Shown: positions 7,686 to 31,214 of the stretch, in pieces | Numbering within the stretch: position 1 is the first letter of the stretch | Layout: the number at the start of each line of letters is the position of its first letter | Assembly: GCF_011386835.1 (NCBI RefSeq) | Contig: NC_088798.1 | Location: forward strand, 11,408,001-11,472,000 | DNA length: 64,000 nucleotides | Source: Chrysemys picta bellii | Taxonomy: Eukaryota | Direction of reading: 5' to 3' | Translations under genes and position numbers: made by a program | Notes under the pieces: model-generated | Databases searched by the model: none | What the model saw: only the letters and a program-made list of their open reading frames with translations | What the model was told of the DNA's origin: nothing

Positions 7686-10288
7686 CAAGAACATACGAAT
7701 GGCCGTACTGGGTCAGACAAATGGTCCACCTAGCCCAGTACCCTCTCTTCCGAAAGGTGGTTGGTGCCAGATACTTCAGAGGTAGTGAACAGAACAGGGC
7801 AATTTATCAAGTGATCTACCCCCTATCATCCATTCCCAGCTTCTGTCAGTCAGAGGTTTAAGGACACCCAGAGCATGGGGTTGCATCTTTGACCATCTTG
7901 GCTAATAGCCATTGACAGACCTATCATCCATGAACTGATCTAATTCTTTTTTTAACCCAGTTATACTTTTGGCCTCCATAATATCCCCTGGCAACCACAA
8001 GGGTGTGCATTGTGTGAAGGACTTCCTTATGTTTGTTTTAAATCTGCTGCCTATTAATTTCATTGGGTGATCCCTGATTCCTGTGTTATGTGAAGGGGTA
8101 AATAACACTTTATTCACTTTCTCTACATCATTCACAATATTGTAGACCTCTGTCATATCTCTCCTCAGTCATCTCTTTTCCAGACTGAACAGTCCTAGAC
8201 TTTTAAATCTCCCATCATATACAAGCAGCTCCATACCCCTAGTCATTTTTGTTGCCCTCTGTACTTTTTTCCAATTCTAATATATCTTTTTTGAGATGGA
8301 GTGATCAGAACTGAATGCAGTATACAAGGTGTGGGTCTACCATGGATTTATACAGTGGCAATATGATGTTGTCTGTCTTACTATCTATCCCTTTCCCAAT
8401 GGTTCCTGACATTCTGGGGTTTCTTTTGTACTGCTGCTGCACATTTAATAGGTGTTTTCAGAGAACTATCCATGATGACTCCAAGATCTCTTTCTTGAGT
8501 GGTAATAGCTAATTTAGACCCCATTGTTTCGTATGTATAGTTGGGATTATGTTTTCCAATGTGTATTACTTTGCATTTATCAGACCTAGTACAGACTCTG
8601 CTATTTACCTCTCTCCACTGTGAAAACTGGACGTTTATTCCTACCCTTTGTTTCCTGTCTTTTAACCAGTTACTGATCCATAAGAGGACCTTCCCTCTTA
8701 TCCCATGACCCTTTACTTTGCTTAAGAGACTTTGGTGGGGATCTTGCCAATGGCTTTCTGAAAGTCCAAGTACACTACTTCTACTGGATCACCCTTTCCA
8801 CAAGTTTCTTGACCCCCTCAAAGAATTCTAATATATTGGTGAGGCATGATTTCCCTTTACAAAAGCTATGTTGACTCTACCCCCGAACATATTGTGTTCA
8901 TCTATGTGTCTGATAATTCTATTTTTTACTATCGTTTCAGCCAATTTGCCTGGTACTGAAGTGAAGCTTATTGGCCTGTAATTACCAGGATCACCTCTGG
9001 AGCCTTTTTAAAAAATTGGCCTCACATTAGTTATCTGCCAGTCATATGGTACAGAGGCTTAGTCATAACTTACATACCACAGTTAGCAGCTCTGCGATTT
9101 CATATTTAAATTCCTTCAGAACACTTGGGCGAATACCATCTGGTCCTGGTGACTTATTTCTGTTTATCAATTTGTTCCAAATCATCCTCTATTGACATGT
9201 CACTTTAGGACAGTTCCTCATATCTGTCACCTAAAAAGAATGGCTCAGGTGTGGGAATCTCCCTCACATCCTCTGCCCTGAAGACCAACGCAAAGAATTC
9301 ATTTAGCTTCTCCGCAACGGCCTTTCGCACCTCGATTGTCCAGTGGCCCCACTGATTGTTTGGCAGGCTTTCTGCTTCTGCTGTACTTAAAAACTAACAG
9401 CAATTTTTGTTGTGTCTTTTACTGTTGCTCTTCGTTTTTGGCCTCCCTAATTATACTTTTACACTTGACTTGCGAGAATTTATGCTCCTTTCTATTTTCC
9501 TCAGTAGGATTTAACTTCCAATTTTTAAAGGATGTCGTTTTGTCTCTAACTGCCTCTTTTACTGTGTTGTTTTGCCATGATGGCATTTTTTTTTTTGGTC
9601 CTCTGTTTTTTATTTTGGTTATACAGTTAGTTTGAGCCTCTGTCATAGTGTTTTTAAAAAGTGTCCATGCAGCTTGTGACTGTTCCTTTTAATTTCTGTT
9701 TAATTGGCTTCCTCGTTTTTGTGTAGTTCTCCTATTTGAAGTTAAATGGTACTGTGCTGGGTTTCTTTGGCATTTTCCCCCATACATGGATGTTACATTT
9801 AATTCCACTATGGTTGCTATTACTAAGAGCTTCAGCTATATTCACCTCTTGAATTAGATCCTGTGTGCCATTTAGAACTAAATCAGGAATTGCCTCTCCT
9901 CTTGTGGGCTTCAGGGTTAGCTGCTCCAAGAAGCAGTCATTAATGGTGTCTAGAAATTTTATGTCTGCATCCCATCCTGAGGTGACATGTTCCCAGTTAA
10001 TATGTGGATAGTTGAAATCCCCCATTATTATTGGGTTTTCTGTTTTTGTGGTCTCTCTAATCTCCCTGAGTATTTCACAATCATAGTCACCATCCTGATC
10101 AGGTGGTCGTCAGTATGTTCCTACTGACATAATCTTCTTATTCAAGCATGGAATTTCTATCCATAGAGATTCTATGGTATTGTTTGATTCATTTAAGATT
10201 TTTACTGTATTTGACTCTATGCTTTCTTTCACATACAGTGCCACTCCCCCACCAGTGTGACCTACTATCATGCCTACATATTTTGTAC
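7686..10288 (-). mobile_element. CR1 LINE, 5'-truncated, decayed ORF2 (RT C-terminus back to APE endonuclease)
   Basis: 3' tail AAGAACATA; fragments MGDFNYPHINWEHV...FLEQLTLKPTRGEAIPDLVL (APE endonuclease) and HPMKLIGSRFKTN. Confidence 0.92.
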
Positions 10289-18771: not shown

Positions 18772-19345
18772 ATGAACATAAGAACAGCCATACTGGGTCA
18801 GACCAAAGGTTCATCTAGCCCATTAGCCTGTCTTCCGACGGTGGCCAATGCCAGGTGCTTCCCAGGGAATGAGCAGAACAGGTAATCATCAAGTGATCCA
18901 TCCCCTGTTGCCCATTTCCACCTTCTGGCAAACAAAGGCTAGAGATATTATCCTTGCCCATCCTGGCTAATAGACATTGATGGACCTATGCTCCATGAAT
19001 TTATCTAGTTCTTTTTTGAACCCTGTTATAGTCGTGGTTGACTGGGTGTTGTGTGAGGAAATACTTCCTTTTGCTTGTTTTAAACTTGCTGCCTATTCAT
19101 TTCATTTGGTGACCTCTAGTTCTTGTGTTGTGAGAAGGAGTGAATAACACTTCCTTATTTACTTTCTCCACACTAGTCATGATTTTATAGACCTCTATCA
19201 TATCCACCCTTAGTCATCTCTTTTCCAAGCTGAAAAGTCCCAGTTTGATTAATCGTTCTTCATATGGAAGCTGTTCCATACCCCTAATCATTTTTGTTGC
19301 CCCTTTCTGAACCTTTTCCAATTCCAGATGGGGTGACCACATCTG
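18772..19345 (-). mobile_element. CR1 3' fragment
   Basis: AACATAAGAAC tail, CR1 3' UTR and ORF2 C-terminal remnants. Confidence 0.88.
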
Positions 19346-21229: not shown

Positions 21230-21900
21230 CAGCGTGTTGCACGCACAGTGCTAGAGGCAAGGGGAGGCAGCAGCCCCCTACAGCAGGGGGCAGATTACAC
21301 CGGGCTCAGCCCCCACAGGGCGGATGAAAGTCCGGTCACAGCCGGGGGTAGGAGCCCCGCTCCCTGCACAGGAAGGCGGCGGGACCCCCCAGGAGGGGGT
21401 GTAAAGCTCCCTGCACAGCGCAGATCTCCTCAGAGAGGGGTTCAGCCCGCCCGGGCGCGAGGGCGCCACACAGAGGAGGATGAATCCCCGCCCCAGGGCG
21501 GCCTTTGCCCTCCGGGAACGGCGGGTGCGGGCAGGCGCTGCGGCCCGGAAGCCGGCTACTGAGCACCGGGGAAGAGGGAGCGGGCGGCGTCGCAGTGACT
21601 GAGGCTCGGCTTGGAGATCATGGCGACCCGGCGGCTGCTGCTCTCCCCTGCCTCCTGCCTGAGGCGGACTAAGGCCCTGGGCGGTCCCGCGGCCCCCGGG
21701 CTGCGGAGGGGCTACAGCAGCGCCGACTCCTTCCAGTACCTGCACCGCAGCATCGTGCCCACCATGCACTTTCAGAAAAGCCTGCCCAGGTAAGGCGGCC
21801 GCTGCCCTCCCCGCCCCTGAGCCAGAGCGCGCGGCACCCCTCTGAACCGGGGCCCCCCGCAGCAGAGCTCCCCCCGGGACCCCCACCAGCTCCGAGATCC
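21230..21900. promoter_or_regulatory. CpG island / CPT2 promoter
   Basis: High GC and CpG density with GGGCGG boxes around the CPT2 ATG; bounds approximate. Confidence 0.85.
21620..21789 (+). CDS. CPT2: Carnitine palmitoyltransferase 2, exon 1 (mitochondrial presequence)
   Basis: gatcATGG strong Kozak; [57 protein letters not shown]; donor AG|GTAAGG; Arg-rich presequence with R-G-Y/S cleavage-like motif. Confidence 0.96.
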
Positions 21901-22312
21901 CCGCAGCAGAGCTCCCAGCCCCTCTCTGAGCCCCCCTGAGCCGGGGACCCCCGCAGCAGAGCTCCCCCCGGGGCCCCCACCACCTCCGAGATCCCCGCAG
22001 CAGAGCTCCCCCCGGGACCCCCACCACCTCCGAGATCCCCGCAGCAGAGCTCCCCCCGGGACCCCCACCACCTCCGAGATCCCCGCAGCAGAGCTCCTCC
22101 CGGGACCCCCACCAGCTCCGAGATCCCCGCAGCAGAGCTCCCAGCCCCTCTCTGAGCCCCCCTGAGCCGGGGACCCCCGCAGCAGAGCTCCCCCCGGGGC
22201 CCCCACCACCTCCGAGATCCCCGCAGCAGAGCTCCCCCCGGGGCCCCCACCACCTCCGAGATCCCCGCAGCAGAGCTCCCAGCCCCTCTCTGAGCCCCCC
22301 TGAGCTGGGGAC
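21855..22312 (+). repeat. Two-unit C-rich minisatellite in CPT2 intron 1
   Basis: 44-bp unit A and 50-bp unit B sharing CCCCGCAGCAGAGCT; order A B A A A A B A A B. Confidence 0.95.
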
Positions 22313-23820
22313 CCCTGCATCAGAACCCCCAGTTCCCCTTTGAGACCCATCACACACCAGAGCCTCTGGTCCTCCTTTCAGTCCCCCGGGGATCTCCACA
22401 CTAGAGACCTTGCCCCCTTCGGAGTGCCTCACCACCACCCTAGGGATCCCCACACTAGAGACCTTGCCCCCTTCTGAGCCCCTCACTGCTACCCCAGGGA
22501 CCCTGCACCACAGACACCTCCCCATCTTCCTTTGAGCCCCACAATCACCCTGGGTTCTTCCTCTGAGCCATCCTCTCCATCACCCTTAGAGCCACTCCAC
22601 TCTAGGACCCCCTACCCTACCCCTTTTGAGTCCCCCATACCGGTAAGGGAGCCCTAGGCATCCTTCTGAGCTCCCAGAAACTCCTCCCTCTCTGCTACTC
22701 CTCCATCCCCTGTGCTAAGAAAACCCCCATCTCCTTTCCCCTGCCCAGCTAAGGGAGCTCCTTTCTCCCATGATTGCTGGCATCTAATGCCCATTTTCTC
22801 CTTCTCCTTTGTCTAGGTCAGTCCTTTTCCCCTGGTAAGGGAGTCCCATGTCTCTACATTTCAGAAATGGTGACTGCTGGCTTTAAAGGCAGCAACATTC
22901 TTCCACATCAGAGAGGAAATGCACTCTGTACAAACAAACAAACAAACAAACAAAAAAACCCTGCTCCAATGCAGAGTAGGCAGCCCTGTGCTATGGGTGA
23001 CTAAATACACAGCTTAATTGCTGGGTCCAACTTTCTTATGGTGAACAACAGGTTTTATGGCTCATGGTGAAGCCTTAATAGCACACTACTAGATCAGGTC
23101 TGCTTTGGGAAACTACCAGTACACAGCAGGTGGTGGGGTCAACAGACCAGTCGATATGTATTGGTTTCAGATTGCTCGCTACACCCCTAATGAATGAGGT
23201 TTGGTATATGCTGAAAGTGCAGGACATGGAGAAGGGTACATTGTCTTTGGGATGGGATACAGTGTATTATGTAGGTGAAAGGTTATTGCTAACAGAGGGT
23301 TGTGACTTTGATCTTTGCTAGTAGTATTCAAGTGTATACTGCCAGTTTAAAAATTATAATCTAATTATAACCTTCTGTCTCAAATCTCTTATCTACCATT
23401 GTTTAAGTAACACATATGATTATTACAAAGGAAAGGGATTAGAGAAAACACCCCCCCCCCCATTTGTTTACTTTGTGCATTGGACAGCACTTCCTGTATA
23501 GTTAATTTCATTGTTTCATTATACTGTAGTTAGTTTCCCCATTTGTTTGTGTGGCTCTTTCACAGAGCAACAGGGGAGAAAGAAGCATTTAAAAAAAATA
23601 GAAATATGGCAGTAAAAACAACAAAAATCAAACTATGTATCAAGGTGAAAACAGCTTTCATGTTTAGGCTAAGATGAGCATTGGAAAGAAATTTGTTCGA
23701 ATTTCCAACAGGAATCAAAATACAGAAAACATTCTATGCCTAGCAGTATATAAAATTATGGAGGATCTGTGAGTTGGCTACTTGTAAAACAAGTTCCTGT
23801 TTTTCTGTCATGCTTACTTA

Positions 23821-26040: not shown

Positions 26041-26840
26041 TTTCACTCGTTATTGCCATCCTGTCACCCCAGTATTTCCCTGGCGGAAAGCCCACCTAAG
26101 CTTAATGTTGAGGGGAAATGTGGCAGATTATTATCGTTAACTGGTTTTCTTGAGCATTATTATGTAAATGGATGTGCTGCAGCTGCAACCGGCCCTCTTT
26201 CCCCCGACTTTCAAGTCCTGTTCATTTTTGTTGTTGTTTCCATAAGTGTAACAAAACATCATTATTCCTATGAGGAGGAAGAATGAGTTAAGAGGCTTAT
26301 ATACCATGGTGAGGAGTGGGTTATAAAACCCAACTTGTATGCTAGCTAGTCTTTCAACTCTGGAGATCTGGACTTCAAATTCTGACTTAAGTCATAGCTG
26401 AAAATGAGTGTGGTTTTACTGAGTCCCCAGTGGGAATTAGGGGTTGCTGCAGGGAAGGAATTCAGAAGGGAAGAACAAAAGACACAGGCAGAAGAAAGTG
26501 AGAAATAGAGAAAGAAGGATGAGAAAGGAAGGTAAATGGGACAGAAGTAATGGTGGTCCCAAAGGTGAGCATGTTTTCCCACTGAGTGATGCAACCTAAA
26601 GGCCATGCTGCACTCTAGATCTTTGTGCAAAGCTCCCACGGACATCAGTGGGAGGTCCATTTCTGATTTGGTGGGAATATGTTGCCCTAATGTACCCCAG
26701 TCCATGGATTGTAATTAAATACAGATATTGGAGCTCTCTACCGAATGACTTTGACAGATAATATAGATGGTTCTAAACAGTGCTTTCACAATTAGCCAAT
26801 TTTACCTGTATTAATCTATTTCTCAACTCTCCATTTTTAG

Positions 26841-28145
26841 GTCCCTGGTTTGATATGTATCTAAGTTCACGTGACTCTGTTGTTTTGAATTTTAACCCAT
26901 TTATGTCTTTCAACCCTGACCCAAAAGCTGAATACAATGATCAGCTCACACGAGCAACGAACATGACTGTTTCTGCTATGCGTTTTTTGAAGACTCTCAG
27001 GGCCGGCTATCTAGAGCCAGAGGTTTTTCACCTCAATCCAGACAAAAGTGACACTCAAACCTTTAGGAGACTCATTCGATTTGTGCCTTCATCTTTCTCA
27101 TGGTTTGGTGCCTACATGGTCAATGCATACCCCTTAGATATGTCTCAGTACTTCCGACTTTTCAATTCCACACGATTGCCTAAGCTCAGTCAAGACGAGC
27201 TTTTTACAGATGAAAAAGCAAAGCACTTGCTGGTGCTCAGAAATGGGAATTTTTATGTATTTGATGTCCTTGATAGAGATGGGAATATAGTGAAGCCTTC
27301 TGAAATACAAGCACACCTGAAATACATACTTAGTGACAATAGTCCAGCCCCAGCCTTCCCTCTTGCATATTTGCCCAGTGAAAACCGAGATATATGGGCA
27401 CTACTGAGAGAGAAGCTACTCGATAATGGCAATGAAGAAGTCCTCCAAAAAGTGGATTCTGCTGTCTTCTGTCTATGTTTAGATGACTTCCCCATTAAAG
27501 ACCTTGTGCACTTGTCCCACACCATGTTGCATGGAGATGGTATTAACCGCTGGTATGATAAGTCCTTTAACCTTATCCTAGCCAAAGATGGCAATGCGGC
27601 CATCCATTTTGAACATTCCTGGGGAGATGGTGTGGCTGTATTAAGATTTCAGAATGAAGTATTTAAAGACAGCACCCAGAAGCCAGCTGTCACCCCACAA
27701 TCTCAACCTGCTGCAGTTGACTCTTCCAGCGCTGTGCAGAAACTCAGCTTTAAGTTGAATGATGCCTTAAAAGCAGGAATTACCAAAGCCAAACAGAACT
27801 TCGATGCCACTGTGGAAACCTTGACTCTCGATTTTATTCAGTTTAAGAAAGGAGGCAAGGAGTTTTTAAAGCAGAAGAAGATCAGTCCTGATGCTGTGGC
27901 TCAACTTTCTTTCCAGATGGCTTTCCTTCGGCAGTACGGCCAGACCGTTGCCACATATGAGTCTTGCAGTACGGCAGCTTTCAAACACGGTCGCACAGAG
28001 ACCATCCGTCCTGCCTCCATCTATACAAAGAAGTGCACGGAAGCTTTTGTCAGGCAACCTTCCAAACACAGCACAGAGGAGCTTCAGCAGATGATTGTTG
28101 AGTGCTCAAAGTACCACAGCCAGTTGACAAAAGAAGCTGCTATGG
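26841..28145 (+). CDS. CPT2: CPT2 exon 4 (1305 bp), carnitine acyltransferase catalytic core
   Basis: TTTTAG|GPWFDMYL...[14 protein letters not shown] (catalytic His motif)...[18 protein letters not shown]...KEAAM(G)|GTAAGT. Confidence 0.98.
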
Positions 28146-28314
28146 GTAAGTGTGAGTGTCAGGTCATGGTGATAGAACGTTCGCATTGCTTCACAAAATG
28201 AATCTCATCAGCTTATTTGCTCGTTAATGCTAAACTTTTACAGAAGTCTCACTAAATGTAATTTAATCTAGCTGGAGGGCCTATGCTCATTCAAACTTTG
28301 TAGAATGCCAACTA

Positions 28315-28470
28315 CACCTCTACCCTGATATAACACGGTAAAGCAGTGCTCCGGGGGGGCAGGGCTGCGCACTCCGGCGGATCAAAGCAAGGTCGATATA
28401 ACGCGGTTTCACCTATAACACGGTAAGATTTTTTGTCTCCCGAGGACAGCGTTATATCGGGGTAGAGGTG
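28315..28470. mobile_element. Tc1/mariner-type MITE (TA TSD)
   Basis: TA|CACCTCTACCCTGATATAAC ... GTTATATCGGGGTAGAGGTG|TA. Confidence 0.9.
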
Positions 28471-29289
28471 TAATAGCAGGGCTTTCCAAGTTAAAAAACA
28501 TATTGTTCTTGTGACATTCTTCTTAAGAAGGGAGTGTCTTTGAGTTCCCCTTATTTGCTTCAGACCCACGCACATCAAGATTTTTCCTATACGGTAGATA
28601 AATTACTGTTATACTAGCCCACATGTGGCAGCTAACTGGCTGATGCCCTGGAGAGTGCAACACAAAGCAGGATTTTGGGTTGCTTCATGTATCTGCCTGC
28701 AGGTGGTACTGAGGCCACTGTGCAAACTGGTCTTGGTTCCTTCTGCTGCACCAGTGATAAATTTTCCCAAGTGGCTCTATCTGACCTGACCCTATTGCAT
28801 TTTAAAATAAATCAGAATTAGAGCTTGCTAACTTCTTCTAGATTTTTAGTAAAATGTAGCCTACAGGGCCTTGTCCAATTTTATTGTAATCTCTTTACTG
28901 TTGGTTCAGTAGCCTTTTCCTCTGTAGTTCCTGCCATTTGGAACATGCTATCTCAGACTCTCTTTTAAAGTAATATGAAAACATTTATTCCTTTTTCAAA
29001 CCTCATCTTTTGATCTTCTCCATTTAACTTCTTAACTATTGTTAAAAACCCTTTTTATTAATATTGCAGTAGTGCCTAGATGTCCCAGAGATCATGGCCC
29101 CATTATAGTAGTTGCTAGCTAAATCAGTAAAATAGAGTTCCTGTCCCAGAGAATGGATGTGCTAAAAATGCATTGCAATTTCCTTCTGTAAGGCATATTA
29201 CCATAACTTGTAAGAAAGCTGCTACAGAAAAAACTCTTGTAAGTTTTGTGGCTTTGAAGAGGTGTGATATTTAGTGTGTTAAATAACTA

Positions 29290-29463
29290 CACCTCTACCT
29301 CGATATAACACGAATTCGGATATAACGCGGTAAAGCATTGGTCCGGGGGGTGTGGGGCTACGCACTCTGGTGGATCAAAGCAAGTTCAATATAACGCAGT
29401 TTCACCTATAATGCGGTAAGATTTTGTGGCTCCCGAGGACAGTGTTATATCAAGGTAGACGTG
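29290..29463. mobile_element. Tc1/mariner-type MITE, second copy of the same family
   Basis: TA|CACCTCTACCTCGATATAAC ... GTTATATCAAGGTAGACGTG|TA. Confidence 0.9.
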
Positions 29464-29511
29464 TATTTTCTGTAGAAAAGCAGTGGTTTTCTGTAGTGTT
29501 TTGTATTTTAA

Positions 29512-30181
29512 TGCCACTATATAAATCCATGGTATGCCCATACCTTGACTACTGAGTGCAGTTCTGGTCACCTCATCTCAAAAGATATATTAGAATTGGA
29601 AAGGGTACCAAGAAAGGCAACAAAAATGATTAGGGATATGGAACAACTTCCATATGAGCGGAGATTAAAAAGAATGGGACCCTTCAGCTTTAGAAAAGAG
29701 ACGACTAAGGGGGGATATGATAGAGGTCTATAAAATCATGGATGGTGTGGAGAAAGTGAAAAGGGAAGCATTATTTACCCCTCCACATAACACACAAACC
29801 AGGGGTCACCCAATGAAATTAAGAGGCAGCAGGTTTAAAAACAAATATAAGGAAGTATTTCTTCCCACAACGCACAGTTGACCTGCGAAATTCATTGCCT
29901 GGGATGTTGTGAAGGCTAAAAGTATAACTGGGTTCAAAAAAGAATTAGGTAAGTTCATGGATGATGGGTCCATCATTGGCTATTTAGCCAAGATGGTTAG
30001 GGACACAACCCCATGCTCTGGGTGTCCCTAACCCTCTGACTGCCAGAAGCAGGGACTGGATGACAAGGGATGGATCACTTGATAATTGCTTTGTTTTGTT
30101 CATTCCCTCTGTATCCTCTGGCATTGGCAGTTTGCCTAAGTGAACCATTAGTCTGATCCATCATGGTCATTCTTATGTTCT
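29512..30181 (+). mobile_element. CR1 3' fragment in CPT2 intron 4, sense orientation
   Basis: LPLYKSMV...LERVPRKATKMIR remnant; tail TTCTTATGTTC; 8-bp TSD TATTTTAA at 29504-29511 and 30182-30189. Confidence 0.92.
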
Positions 30182-30192
30182 TATTTTAACAG

Positions 30193-30524
30193 GTCAAGGA
30201 TTTGACCGGCATTTGTTCAGTTTGCGTTATTTGGCAGCATCAAAAGGTATCCCATTACCTGACATCTACCAGGACCAAACCTACGCTCAGCTGAATCACA
30301 ACATTCTGTCCACAAGCACATTGAGCAGCCCAGCTGTGAATATGGGAGGATTTGCTCCAGTGGTGCCGGATGGCTTTGGTGTAGCCTATGGAGTGCATGA
30401 TGATTGGATTGGCTGCAGTGCCTCTTCTTACCCAGCCAGGAATGTACACGAATTCGTCCAGTGTGTGCATAAGTCACTGGAAGATATTTTTCATGTTTTA
30501 GAAGGTAAGCATATCAGTAGGTAG
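30193..30524 (+). CDS. CPT2: CPT2 exon 5 to stop (332 bp); full CDS 1995 nt = 664 aa
   Basis: TAACAG|[16 protein letters not shown]...[16 protein letters not shown]...LEGKHISR*; phases of all five exons join without frameshift. Confidence 0.97.
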
Positions 30525-31214
30525 GCACAACAGGGCTGGGATACTTTTTTTTAATGCACAATATAAAATGTTTGGATCAAGATCACTTCTGATCATGTGT
30601 GGCTGAATGTGGAAAAATGTTGCTAGTGCTAATTTACTAAGCATTTTGACTGGGATTTTCAAAGGAGTCTATAAGAATTAAGTGACCAACTTGCACTGAA
30701 TTTCCATGGGAGTTAAGCACCTTTTGAAAATCTTAGCCATATAAAGAAATTAAGTGCAAGCGCCTGCATGCGATATTCAGGAAATACTTAATTCTGATAT
30801 TCTGAACTGTTAGATAATGGAATATAAAATGTTCTTAAAATATAACAGAGGCATTAAATATTCATTTCTAGAAAGGAACTTTAGTAGTGTACTGATTAAA
30901 CTTGAGCTTAAGATCTATGAGTGTTCATGTTTACATTGGGAACGAGAAACTACATTTGAACAATGTTGTAACATCTACAAAAGTTGTATTCAGTTGTAAA
31001 TCCTACACATGTGATATGCTCACTTACTAGATCAGTCATCTTTATTTTTCTTGTTAAATTTGAATCAGTGTCAAACTAACTGCCTCTTCTGTTGGAAGCA
31101 TTTCCAATATAATGATTGGTTTAAATGAAAACGTGAGACTTTAACAATACCAACAACTGTAATCATGTGTTAAATCTTCAAACTGTTAAGAAATTGGTTG
31201 GACAATAATGTTTA

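What the first reader, a model, noticed from the sequence alone, without database searches (positions are those of the whole stretch)
29480..30195. CR1 insertion 3 nt before CPT2 exon 5 now supplies the upstream part of the splice acceptor
The TSD TATTTTAA (29504-29511 and 30182-30189) places the insertion immediately before CAG|exon 5 (seen). Removing the element restores a plausible ancestral acceptor, GTGTTTTGTATTTTAACAG. The ancestral branch-point region is displaced about 680 bp upstream, and its copy is followed by TG, not AG. Upstream of the duplicated 8-mer, the acceptor region is now CR1 sequence: the tail TTCTTATGTTC as pyrimidine tract and CTGAT (30153-30157) as candidate branch point. 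This would be exaptation of a LINE tail at the last exon of an essential metabolic gene (inference).
Basis: partly seen in the sequence, partly recalled or inferred. Interest (0 to 1): 0.7.

Follow-up and report, generated by a model that had tools for sequence, protein, structure and literature searches.

The report
Old CR1 fragment rebuilt CPT2 acceptor
In turtles an ancient jumping-gene fragment landed within a dozen bases of the last exon of the fat-burning gene CPT2, and its tail now supplies most of the signal used to splice that exon: a clean, very old example of a known kind of event.

Summary
The window is Chrysemys picta bellii CPT2.

- **Shared by turtles.** The same insertion is in Emys, Natator and Carettochelys.
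- **Absent from outgroups.** Alligator, stork, tinamou, Elgaria and Gekko lack it. In them, sequence orthologous to the turtle flank upstream of the CR1 abuts exon 5 directly, so this is a true empty site.
- **Acceptor in use.** Spliced contigs from three studies join 28145 to 30193 exactly.
- **Consequence.** Everything upstream of position -12, including any usable branch point, is CR1 sequence. The best candidate is GTCTGAT at -37, kept as GTCTAAT in Carettochelys. The rival is TTCTTAT at -18.

- The 8-nt "TSD" is probably not a true duplication. All five outgroups carry ATTTT twice before AACAG, the CR1 tail is a TTCTTATG repeat, and CR1 is reported to make no or <6-bp duplications. A no-TSD insertion at about -9 to -12 restores the outgroup sequence without a gap.
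- The CR1 tail shows no measurable extra constraint (33/40 vs 288/360 invariant columns), so "exaptation" is functional replacement, not shown selection.

It is a new member of a known kind. The scan noted a like case on other DNA of this genome (VPS4A).

The parts
26840..28145 (+). CPT2 exon 4; the last base, 28145, is the first base of a split Gly codon
   Evidence: ORF and translation. 435/435 identical to P0126, Chrysemys CPT2. GT at 28146.
28146..30192 (+). CPT2 intron 4 (2047 nt, GT..AG)
   Evidence: Spliced contigs of runs X1, X9 and X10 skip exactly these 2047 nt.
29464..29511 (+). Displaced ancestral acceptor flank: the old branch-point region and pyrimidine tract, now about 680 nt from the exon
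   Evidence: It aligns to the last ~50 nt of alligator and stork intron 4, 0/500 shuffles as good. The position of the outgroups' -24 branch A is G here.
29504..29511 (+). Upstream copy of TATTTTAA, followed by TG
   Evidence: Conserved as TATTTTAA or CATTTTAA in the four turtles.
29512..30181 (+). 5'-truncated CR1 LINE 3' fragment in sense orientation. True limits may be 29509/29511 to 30181/30184.
   Evidence: 80% identical to the 7687-8363(-) copy and 72% to 18844-19324(-). The sibling continues into an RT-like ORF. Octamer tail.
30151..30157 (+). Best branch-point candidate GTCTGAT; the A at 30156 is position -37
   Evidence: Perfect nnyTrAy match. GTCTGAT in Emys and Natator, GTCTAAT in Carettochelys. 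No AG between it and the acceptor. Motif and usual distance from PMC8531310.
30170..30184 (+). CR1 tail microsatellite: TTCTTATG plus TTCTTAT. It is the present pyrimidine tract. The A at 30175 (-18) is the rival branch-point candidate.
   Evidence: The same unit is repeated four times in a Gekko CR1 tail and about twice in the window copy at 7692. 2-4 copies of an 8-bp repeat are typical of CR1 (PMC2817409).
30182..30192 (+). Last 11 nt of the intron (TATTTTAACAG), identical to the outgroup-type acceptor end. Holds the downstream TATTTTAA (30182-30189) and the AG (30191-30192).
   Evidence: Invariant in the four turtles. The same ATTTTAACAG ending is in stork, and TTTTAACAG in alligator.
30193..30524 (+). 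CPT2 exon 5 coding part, the last exon; stop at 30522-30524
   Evidence: 109/109 identical to P0126. The MGQGFDRH junction is the same in all orthologous proteins.

Best explanation
After turtles split from archosaurs, and before softshell-type and hard-shelled cryptodires split, a CR1 LINE copy was reverse-transcribed into the pyrimidine tract of CPT2 intron 4. It was truncated to its last ~670 nt and lies in the sense orientation. It landed somewhere between 3 and about 12 nt upstream of exon 5, most likely at -9 to -12 with no true target-site duplication.

The insertion pushed the old branch point (about -24 in the outgroups) and most of the old pyrimidine tract about 680 nt away. Splicing survived because the CR1 3' end happens to carry what an acceptor needs:
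- a T-rich octamer microsatellite (TTCTTATG TTCTTAT), which fuses with the remaining TTTTAACAG into a 15/20-pyrimidine tract;
- about 20 nt further up, a conserved 3'-UTR heptamer GTCTGAY that fits the branch-point consensus, with no AG downstream of it.

Shown: the insertion, its age bracket, the empty site, and use of the acceptor. Inferred: which A is the branch point, and that the CR1 tail binds U2AF.
For: - **Identity.** Chrysemys CPT2; exons 4 and 5 are 100% identical to P0126.
- **CR1 nature.** Homology to sibling copies that carry RT remnants, plus the octamer tail.
- **Same insertion in four turtles.** Emys, Natator and Carettochelys carry it at the same site.
- **Empty site.** Alligator, stork, tinamou, Elgaria and Gekko lack it, and their acceptor flank aligns to turtle 29464-29511 (0/500 shuffles as good).
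- **Acceptor used.** Contigs from three studies join 28145 to 30193, and the protein junction MGQGFDRH is conserved.
- **Branch point.** GTCTGAT/GTCTAAT at -37 is conserved in all four turtles and fits nnyTrAy perfectly. There is no AG in 30152-30190, against 45 AGs across the CR1.
- **Tract strength kept.** 15/20 pyrimidines now; 15/20 in alligator and 14/20 in stork.
- **Usual branch-point range.** 18-37 nt upstream of the acceptor (PMC8531310).
Against: - No branch point has been mapped. Only assembled contigs were available, so lariat reads could not be sought.
- The last 40 nt of the CR1 are not more conserved than the rest: 33/40 against 288/360 invariant columns.
- The -37 position is at the far edge of the usual range, and a second candidate lies at -18.
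- No pleurodire or Pelodiscus genome could be reached, so the lower age bound is crown Cryptodira only.
Confidence: 0.85

Rival explanations
1. The CR1 integrated 3 nt before the exon with a true 8-nt target-site duplication TATTTTAA, and the pre-insertion acceptor ended GTATTTTAACAG.
For: - The two 8-mers are exact and flush with both ends of CR1 homology.
- The upstream flank ends in AA, which in the outgroups occurs only just before CAG.
Against: - All five outgroups have two ATTTT units, so this model needs an extra 5-nt loss on the turtle stem. Its alignment score to alligator is 26, against 33 for the no-TSD model.
- The TAT of the downstream copy is accounted for by the second TTCTTATG tail unit.
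- The TA.TGCC at the 5' end resembles the sibling CR1 sequence TATTGCC.
- CR1 is reported to make no or <6-bp TSDs.
Confidence: 0.3
2. The branch point is the A at -18 (30175), inside the first CR1 octamer TTCTTAT, not the CTGAT at -37. It would still be CR1-derived.
For: - It matches yTnAy, and its distance is inside the usual 18-37 nt range.
- The A is conserved in all four turtles.
Against: - Position 4 of the heptamer is C in Carettochelys (TTCCTAT). That T is the most constrained position in cattle and human.
- Only about 14 nt of pyrimidine tract would follow it.
- It scores lower than GTCTGAT.
Confidence: 0.25
3. The displaced ancestral branch point near 29480-29495 is still used over about 700 nt.
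For: Very distant branch points exist in some genes (general knowledge).
Against: - 45 AG dinucleotides lie between it and the acceptor. Under the first-AG-downstream rule quoted in PMC8531310, one of those would be chosen instead.
- The base orthologous to the outgroups' branch A is G in Chrysemys (TCTGTAG).
Confidence: 0.02
4. The CR1 is ancestral to sauropsids and was lost precisely in archosaurs and lepidosaurs, or it is an assembly artefact.
For: None found.
Against: - It would need at least two independent, exact deletions that restore a collinear acceptor.
- The element is present in four independent assemblies.
Confidence: 0.02

Closest known systems
Canine merle allele: SINE inserted at the PMEL intron 10 / exon 11 boundary (PMC7349775)
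   Same: A retroposon sits right at a splice acceptor. The original acceptor end is kept next to the exon. The element's T-rich end becomes part of the pyrimidine tract, and the old branch point is pushed away.
   Different: Merle is recent, polymorphic and harmful. It is in the antisense orientation, its tract is a poly(T) made from the poly(A) tail, it has a 15-bp TSD, and it causes cryptic splicing. The CPT2 CR1 is fixed, older than the cryptodire radiation, in the sense orientation, has an octamer tail, and contigs show only the normal junction.
Antisense Alu exonization, where the poly(A) tail read as poly(U) serves as pyrimidine tract (reviewed in PMC7349775)
   Same: Transposon sequence supplies the pyrimidine tract and branch region of a working 3' splice site.
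   Different: Alu cases create new, mostly alternative exons. Here the signals of an existing constitutive coding exon were replaced and no new exon arose.
Fixed transposons inside the intronic 'underrepresentation zones' next to exons (Zhang, Romanish and Mager 2011, PMC3088655)
   Same: A LINE fragment in the sense orientation, less than 20 bp from a splice acceptor. That is the class the paper calls very likely harmful and strongly depleted.
   Different: That survey covers human and mouse L1, Alu and LTR elements. It does not describe replaced branch points, and no CR1 or reptile case is treated.
   Same: Same genome, same element class, same outcome: old signals pushed away and the CR1 tail used as acceptor signal.
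   Different: It is a different gene on other DNA. I did not examine it, so it counts as a lead only.

Membership tests
CR1 LINE (5'-truncated 3' fragment) | 3' end made of 2-4 copies of an 8-bp microsatellite (ATTCTRTG type), with no poly(A) | tested here: met
   The tail is CATTCTTATG then TTCTTAT at 30168-30184. The same TTCTTATG unit is repeated in other tails of the window and of Gekko. Definition from PMC2817409.
CR1 LINE (5'-truncated 3' fragment) | Homology to copies that encode a LINE reverse transcriptase | tested here: met
   80% identity over 620 nt to 7765-8363(-). That copy runs on into ORF pieces which hit RVT_1-bearing turtle proteins at E down to 5e-42. Pfam on the pieces themselves was weak: RVT_1 at E 0.008, below the cutoff.
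CR1 LINE (5'-truncated 3' fragment) | [quoted passage not shown] | tested here: inconclusive
   An exact 8-nt repeat flanks the element. It can be explained without duplication by the ancestral ATTTT-ATTTT repeat plus the octamer tail.
CR1 LINE (5'-truncated 3' fragment) | Conserved 3'-UTR hairpin before the microsatellite | tested here: inconclusive
   The fold of 30100-30200 shows a small stem (GAUCC/GGUC region), but the energy is no better than shuffles (z 0.13). The copy is about 20% diverged.
Transposon-derived functional splice signal | Element absent at the orthologous site in outgroups, with an alignable empty site | tested here: met
   Five outgroups lack it. Their flank aligns at 47/59 identity, 0/500 shuffles as good.
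Transposon-derived functional splice signal | The splice site next to the element is the one used in mature RNA | tested here: met
   A 28145-to-30193 joint is seen in contigs of three studies. The annotated protein junction agrees.
Transposon-derived functional splice signal | Branch point mapped inside the element | not testable with these tools
   Only Logan contigs were served, with no raw reads, so lariat reads could not be sought. Geometry and AG counts make it very likely.
Exaptation in the strict sense (selection on the transposon-derived part) | Slower divergence of the element's functional part than of its neutral part | tested here: not met
   Last 40 nt: 33/40 columns invariant in four turtles. 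CR1 body: 288/360. Unique intron: 582/751. Only the last 19 nt of the intron are fully invariant, and 8 of those are CR1. Power is low with four species.

The most novel reading that the evidence does not exclude
The CR1 3' end may be a ready-made 3' splice-site module that lacks only the AG. A branch-point-consensus heptamer (GTCTGAY) sits about 20 nt before a T-rich TTCTTATG repeat. The heptamer was present in all nine CR1 tails I looked at; four of these are orthologs of the CPT2 copy, the other five come from the turtle window, Gekko and stork.

The tail also resembles pyrimidine tracts (TTCTTAT against ATTTTAT). Microhomology-primed reverse transcription could therefore even favour acceptors as targets. 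Sense CR1 insertions into acceptors would then be self-healing and recurrent in turtles, crocodilians and birds.
Probability: 0.2. Interest if true: 0.6.

Novelty: new member of a known kind. Interest (0 to 1): 0.4.

Why it matters
A LINE landing within 20 nt of a splice acceptor is usually a disease mutation. Here one was fixed in the last exon of a gene whose loss causes a severe fatty-acid oxidation defect in people (general knowledge). It has been kept since before the softshell / hard-shell turtle split.

It gives a dated natural experiment on how much of an acceptor can be swapped at once: branch point moved from about -24 to about -37 or -18, and the tract replaced from -12 upward.

It also points to a testable general property of CR1 tails. 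It corrects the tempting reading of a flanking repeat as a TSD when the target is itself a short tandem repeat.

Tried and rejected
- **Failed ortholog look-ups.** Trachemys, Mauremys, Chelonia and Chelonoidis proteins gave nothing because only a gene's longest product is on record.
- **No pleurodire or Pelodiscus locus.** Neither appeared among the named cluster members, so presence in all turtles is untested.
- **Pfam.** The two ORF pieces of the CPT2 CR1 copy gave nothing. The sibling's pieces gave only a sub-threshold RVT_1 match.
- **Rfam on 28100-30600.** One chance-level miRNA match, E 0.45.
- **RNA fold of the tail.** No better than shuffles.
- **Sequencing runs.** Only assembled contigs of runs guessed to be RNA were served. 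They give no strand, depth or lariat information and no rare isoforms.
- **Constraint test on the tail.** Negative.
- **TSD survey of other CR1 copies.** Too few copies for a statistic.
- **Readings rejected.** Loss in the outgroups, an assembly artefact, and continued use of the displaced branch point.
- I did not build a joined CDS. Exons were searched one by one, by reference.

Full report
**What the window holds.** The + strand carries CPT2. A long ORF gives exon 4 (26840-28145) and a second gives the last exon (30193 to the stop at 30522-30524). Both translations are 100% identical to Chrysemys picta bellii CPT2, XP_005284889.2 (P0126). Trachemys, Emys and Terrapene come next. Exon 4 ends ...ATGG|GTAAGT and exon 5 starts after ...AACAG|. 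The protein junction MGQGFDRH is the same in turtles, alligator, stork and lizard. The window has no N. I searched the exons one by one by reference and built no joined CDS.

**Checking the observation.**
- TATTTTAA at 29504-29511 and at 30182-30189;
- CAG, then the exon at 30193;
- CTGAT at 30153-30157;
- TG after the upstream 8-mer.

The 670 nt in between are 80% identical to a minus-strand element at 7687-8363 and 72% identical to another at 18844-19324. The first sibling runs on 5' into broken ORFs. One 135-aa piece of it hits many RVT_1-bearing turtle proteins, with E down to 5e-42. The 3' end is the CR1 hallmark: an 8-bp unit, here TTCTTATG followed by TTCTTAT, with no poly(A). The same unit is seen four times in a Gekko copy. 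The definition comes from PMC2817409. So this is a 5'-truncated CR1 3' fragment in the sense orientation.

**Is it an insertion, and how old?** I fetched the orthologous gene from Emys, Natator and Carettochelys. All three carry the same element at the same place, with the same ends. Alligator, stork, Elgaria, tinamou and Gekko lack it.
- In alligator and stork the last ~50 nt of intron 4 align to turtle 29464-29511, the stretch that now lies upstream of the CR1.
- With the element removed, the turtle sequence aligns to alligator at 47/59, and no shuffle out of 500 does as well.
- The present-day last 60 nt align poorly to alligator (score 9; 20 of 500 shuffles do as well); against stork they still beat every shuffle (score 14), less than either reconstruction (15 and 20).

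This is a proper empty site. The insertion dates after the turtle-archosaur split, whose common ancestor lived more than 230 Ma according to PMC4316615. It dates before the split of Carettochelys-type and hard-shelled cryptodires, which is Jurassic by general knowledge. Pleurodires could not be reached.

**Is the acceptor used?** Contigs of three runs from three studies (X1, X9, X10) skip exactly 2047 nt with GT..AG ends, joining 28145 to 30193. One 2628-nt contig covers all of exon 4 and exon 5. The runs are only guessed to be RNA, but spliced contigs can hardly be anything else. No other joint into exon 5 was listed. Contigs do drop rare forms, so minor isoforms are not excluded.

**The "TSD".**
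- All five outgroups end the intron with two short units: [T/C]ATTTT ATTTT, then AACAG or a close variant.
It therefore needs a 5-nt loss on the turtle stem in addition to an 8-nt duplication.
- If one removes 29511-30183 instead (673 nt, no duplication), the flanks ...GTATTTTA and TTTTAACAG join to give exactly the stork's ending. They line up with alligator without a gap: score 33 against 26.
- The TAT at the start of the downstream 8-mer is what the second TTCTTATG unit of the tail would give anyway.
- The TAATGCC at the 5' end resembles the sibling's TATTGCC.
- CR1 is described as making no or <6-bp duplications (PMC3265382) or none at all (PMC2817409).

I put about 2:1 on "no true TSD, entry at about -9 to -12" against "8-nt TSD, entry at -3". 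The functional outcome is the same under either model: the last 11 nt are of the original type and everything from -12 upward is CR1.

**How the acceptor works now (inferred).**
- The outgroups have a good branch heptamer at -24: CCGTGAT in alligator and CTCTAAT in stork. In Chrysemys the orthologous displaced heptamer reads TCTGTAG, with G at the old A.
- 45 AG dinucleotides lie between that region and the acceptor, and none lies in 30152-30190. By the first-AG rule cited in PMC8531310, the branch must lie inside the CR1.
- The top candidate is GTCTGAT (A at 30156, -37). It fits nnyTrAy perfectly, is present in Emys and Natator, and reads GTCTAAT in Carettochelys, a change that keeps the consensus.
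- The rival is TTCTTAT (A at 30175, -18). Its key T is C in Carettochelys.
- The tract is as pyrimidine-rich as before: 15/20, against 15/20 in alligator and 14/20 in stork.

**Constraint.** In four turtles the last 40 nt of the CR1 have 33/40 invariant columns, the CR1 body 288/360 and the unique intron 582/751. Only the last 19 nt of the intron are fully invariant, as at any acceptor. With four species the power is low. "Exaptation" should be read as forced functional replacement, not as shown selection.

**Comparison with what is known.**
- Transposons within 20 bp of an acceptor are strongly depleted and often mutagenic, LINEs in the sense orientation especially (PMC3088655).
- The dog merle SINE sits at an acceptor, keeps the original site beside the exon and lengthens the tract, but it is recent and damaging (PMC7349775).
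- Alu tails supply tracts for new exons.
- The CPT2 case is the benign, ancient, fixed counterpart, on a constitutive coding exon.
I did not test it.

**A wider lead.** All nine CR1 tails I collected carry GTCTGAY or a close variant about 20 nt before the octamers; four are orthologs of the CPT2 copy, the other five come from the turtle window, Gekko and stork. The CR1 3' end thus looks like a portable branch-point-plus-tract module, which could make such insertions tolerable and recurrent. This is untested.

**Verdict.** The feature is real.

Noticed in passing
window 28313-28472 and 29288-29465: Two copies, 88-90% alike, of a ~160-175-nt element with terminal inverted repeats (TACACCTCTACCC.GATATAAC at one end, its complement at the other). 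It looks like a MITE. Both copies lie in the same orientation in CPT2 intron 4. They are present in Chrysemys and Emys and absent in Natator and Carettochelys. Logan contigs pile up on them in the tens of thousands, so the family is very abundant.
   Followed up: partly
window 29946-29954: A perfect donor consensus TAG|GTAAGT lies inside the CR1, about 245 nt before exon 5. The G that makes the GT is shared with Emys. Natator and the other CR1 copies read GATAAG or similar. No joint from it was among those listed.
   Followed up: partly
window 30133-30134; L002 about 9700-9725; L003 about 9110-9135: Chrysemys and Emys lack about 19 nt of the CR1 3' UTR (CACTGTCGGCAGACAGGA-like). Natator, Carettochelys and the sibling CR1 copies keep it. 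Natator has an extra ~52-nt partial duplication just upstream, and much of the CR1 body is replaced or rearranged in Carettochelys.
   Followed up: no
window 7687-9600 (-) and 18774-19324 (-): Two more decayed CR1 copies. The first is longer, with broken reverse-transcriptase ORF pieces and an internal deletion.
   Followed up: partly
window about 21280-22530: A GC-rich stretch (62% GC) just after the likely CPT2 exon 1 (an ORF at 21611-21793 reads ...[19 protein letters not shown]). Its minus-strand ORFs show a repeating peptide pattern, so it looks like a tandem repeat in intron 1.
   Followed up: no
P0131 (Gopherus evgoodei CPT2 isoform X2): The annotated isoform has a different, longer C-terminus after ...DIFRVLE. 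This suggests an alternative donor inside exon 5 in tortoises. It is unrelated to the CR1.
   Followed up: no
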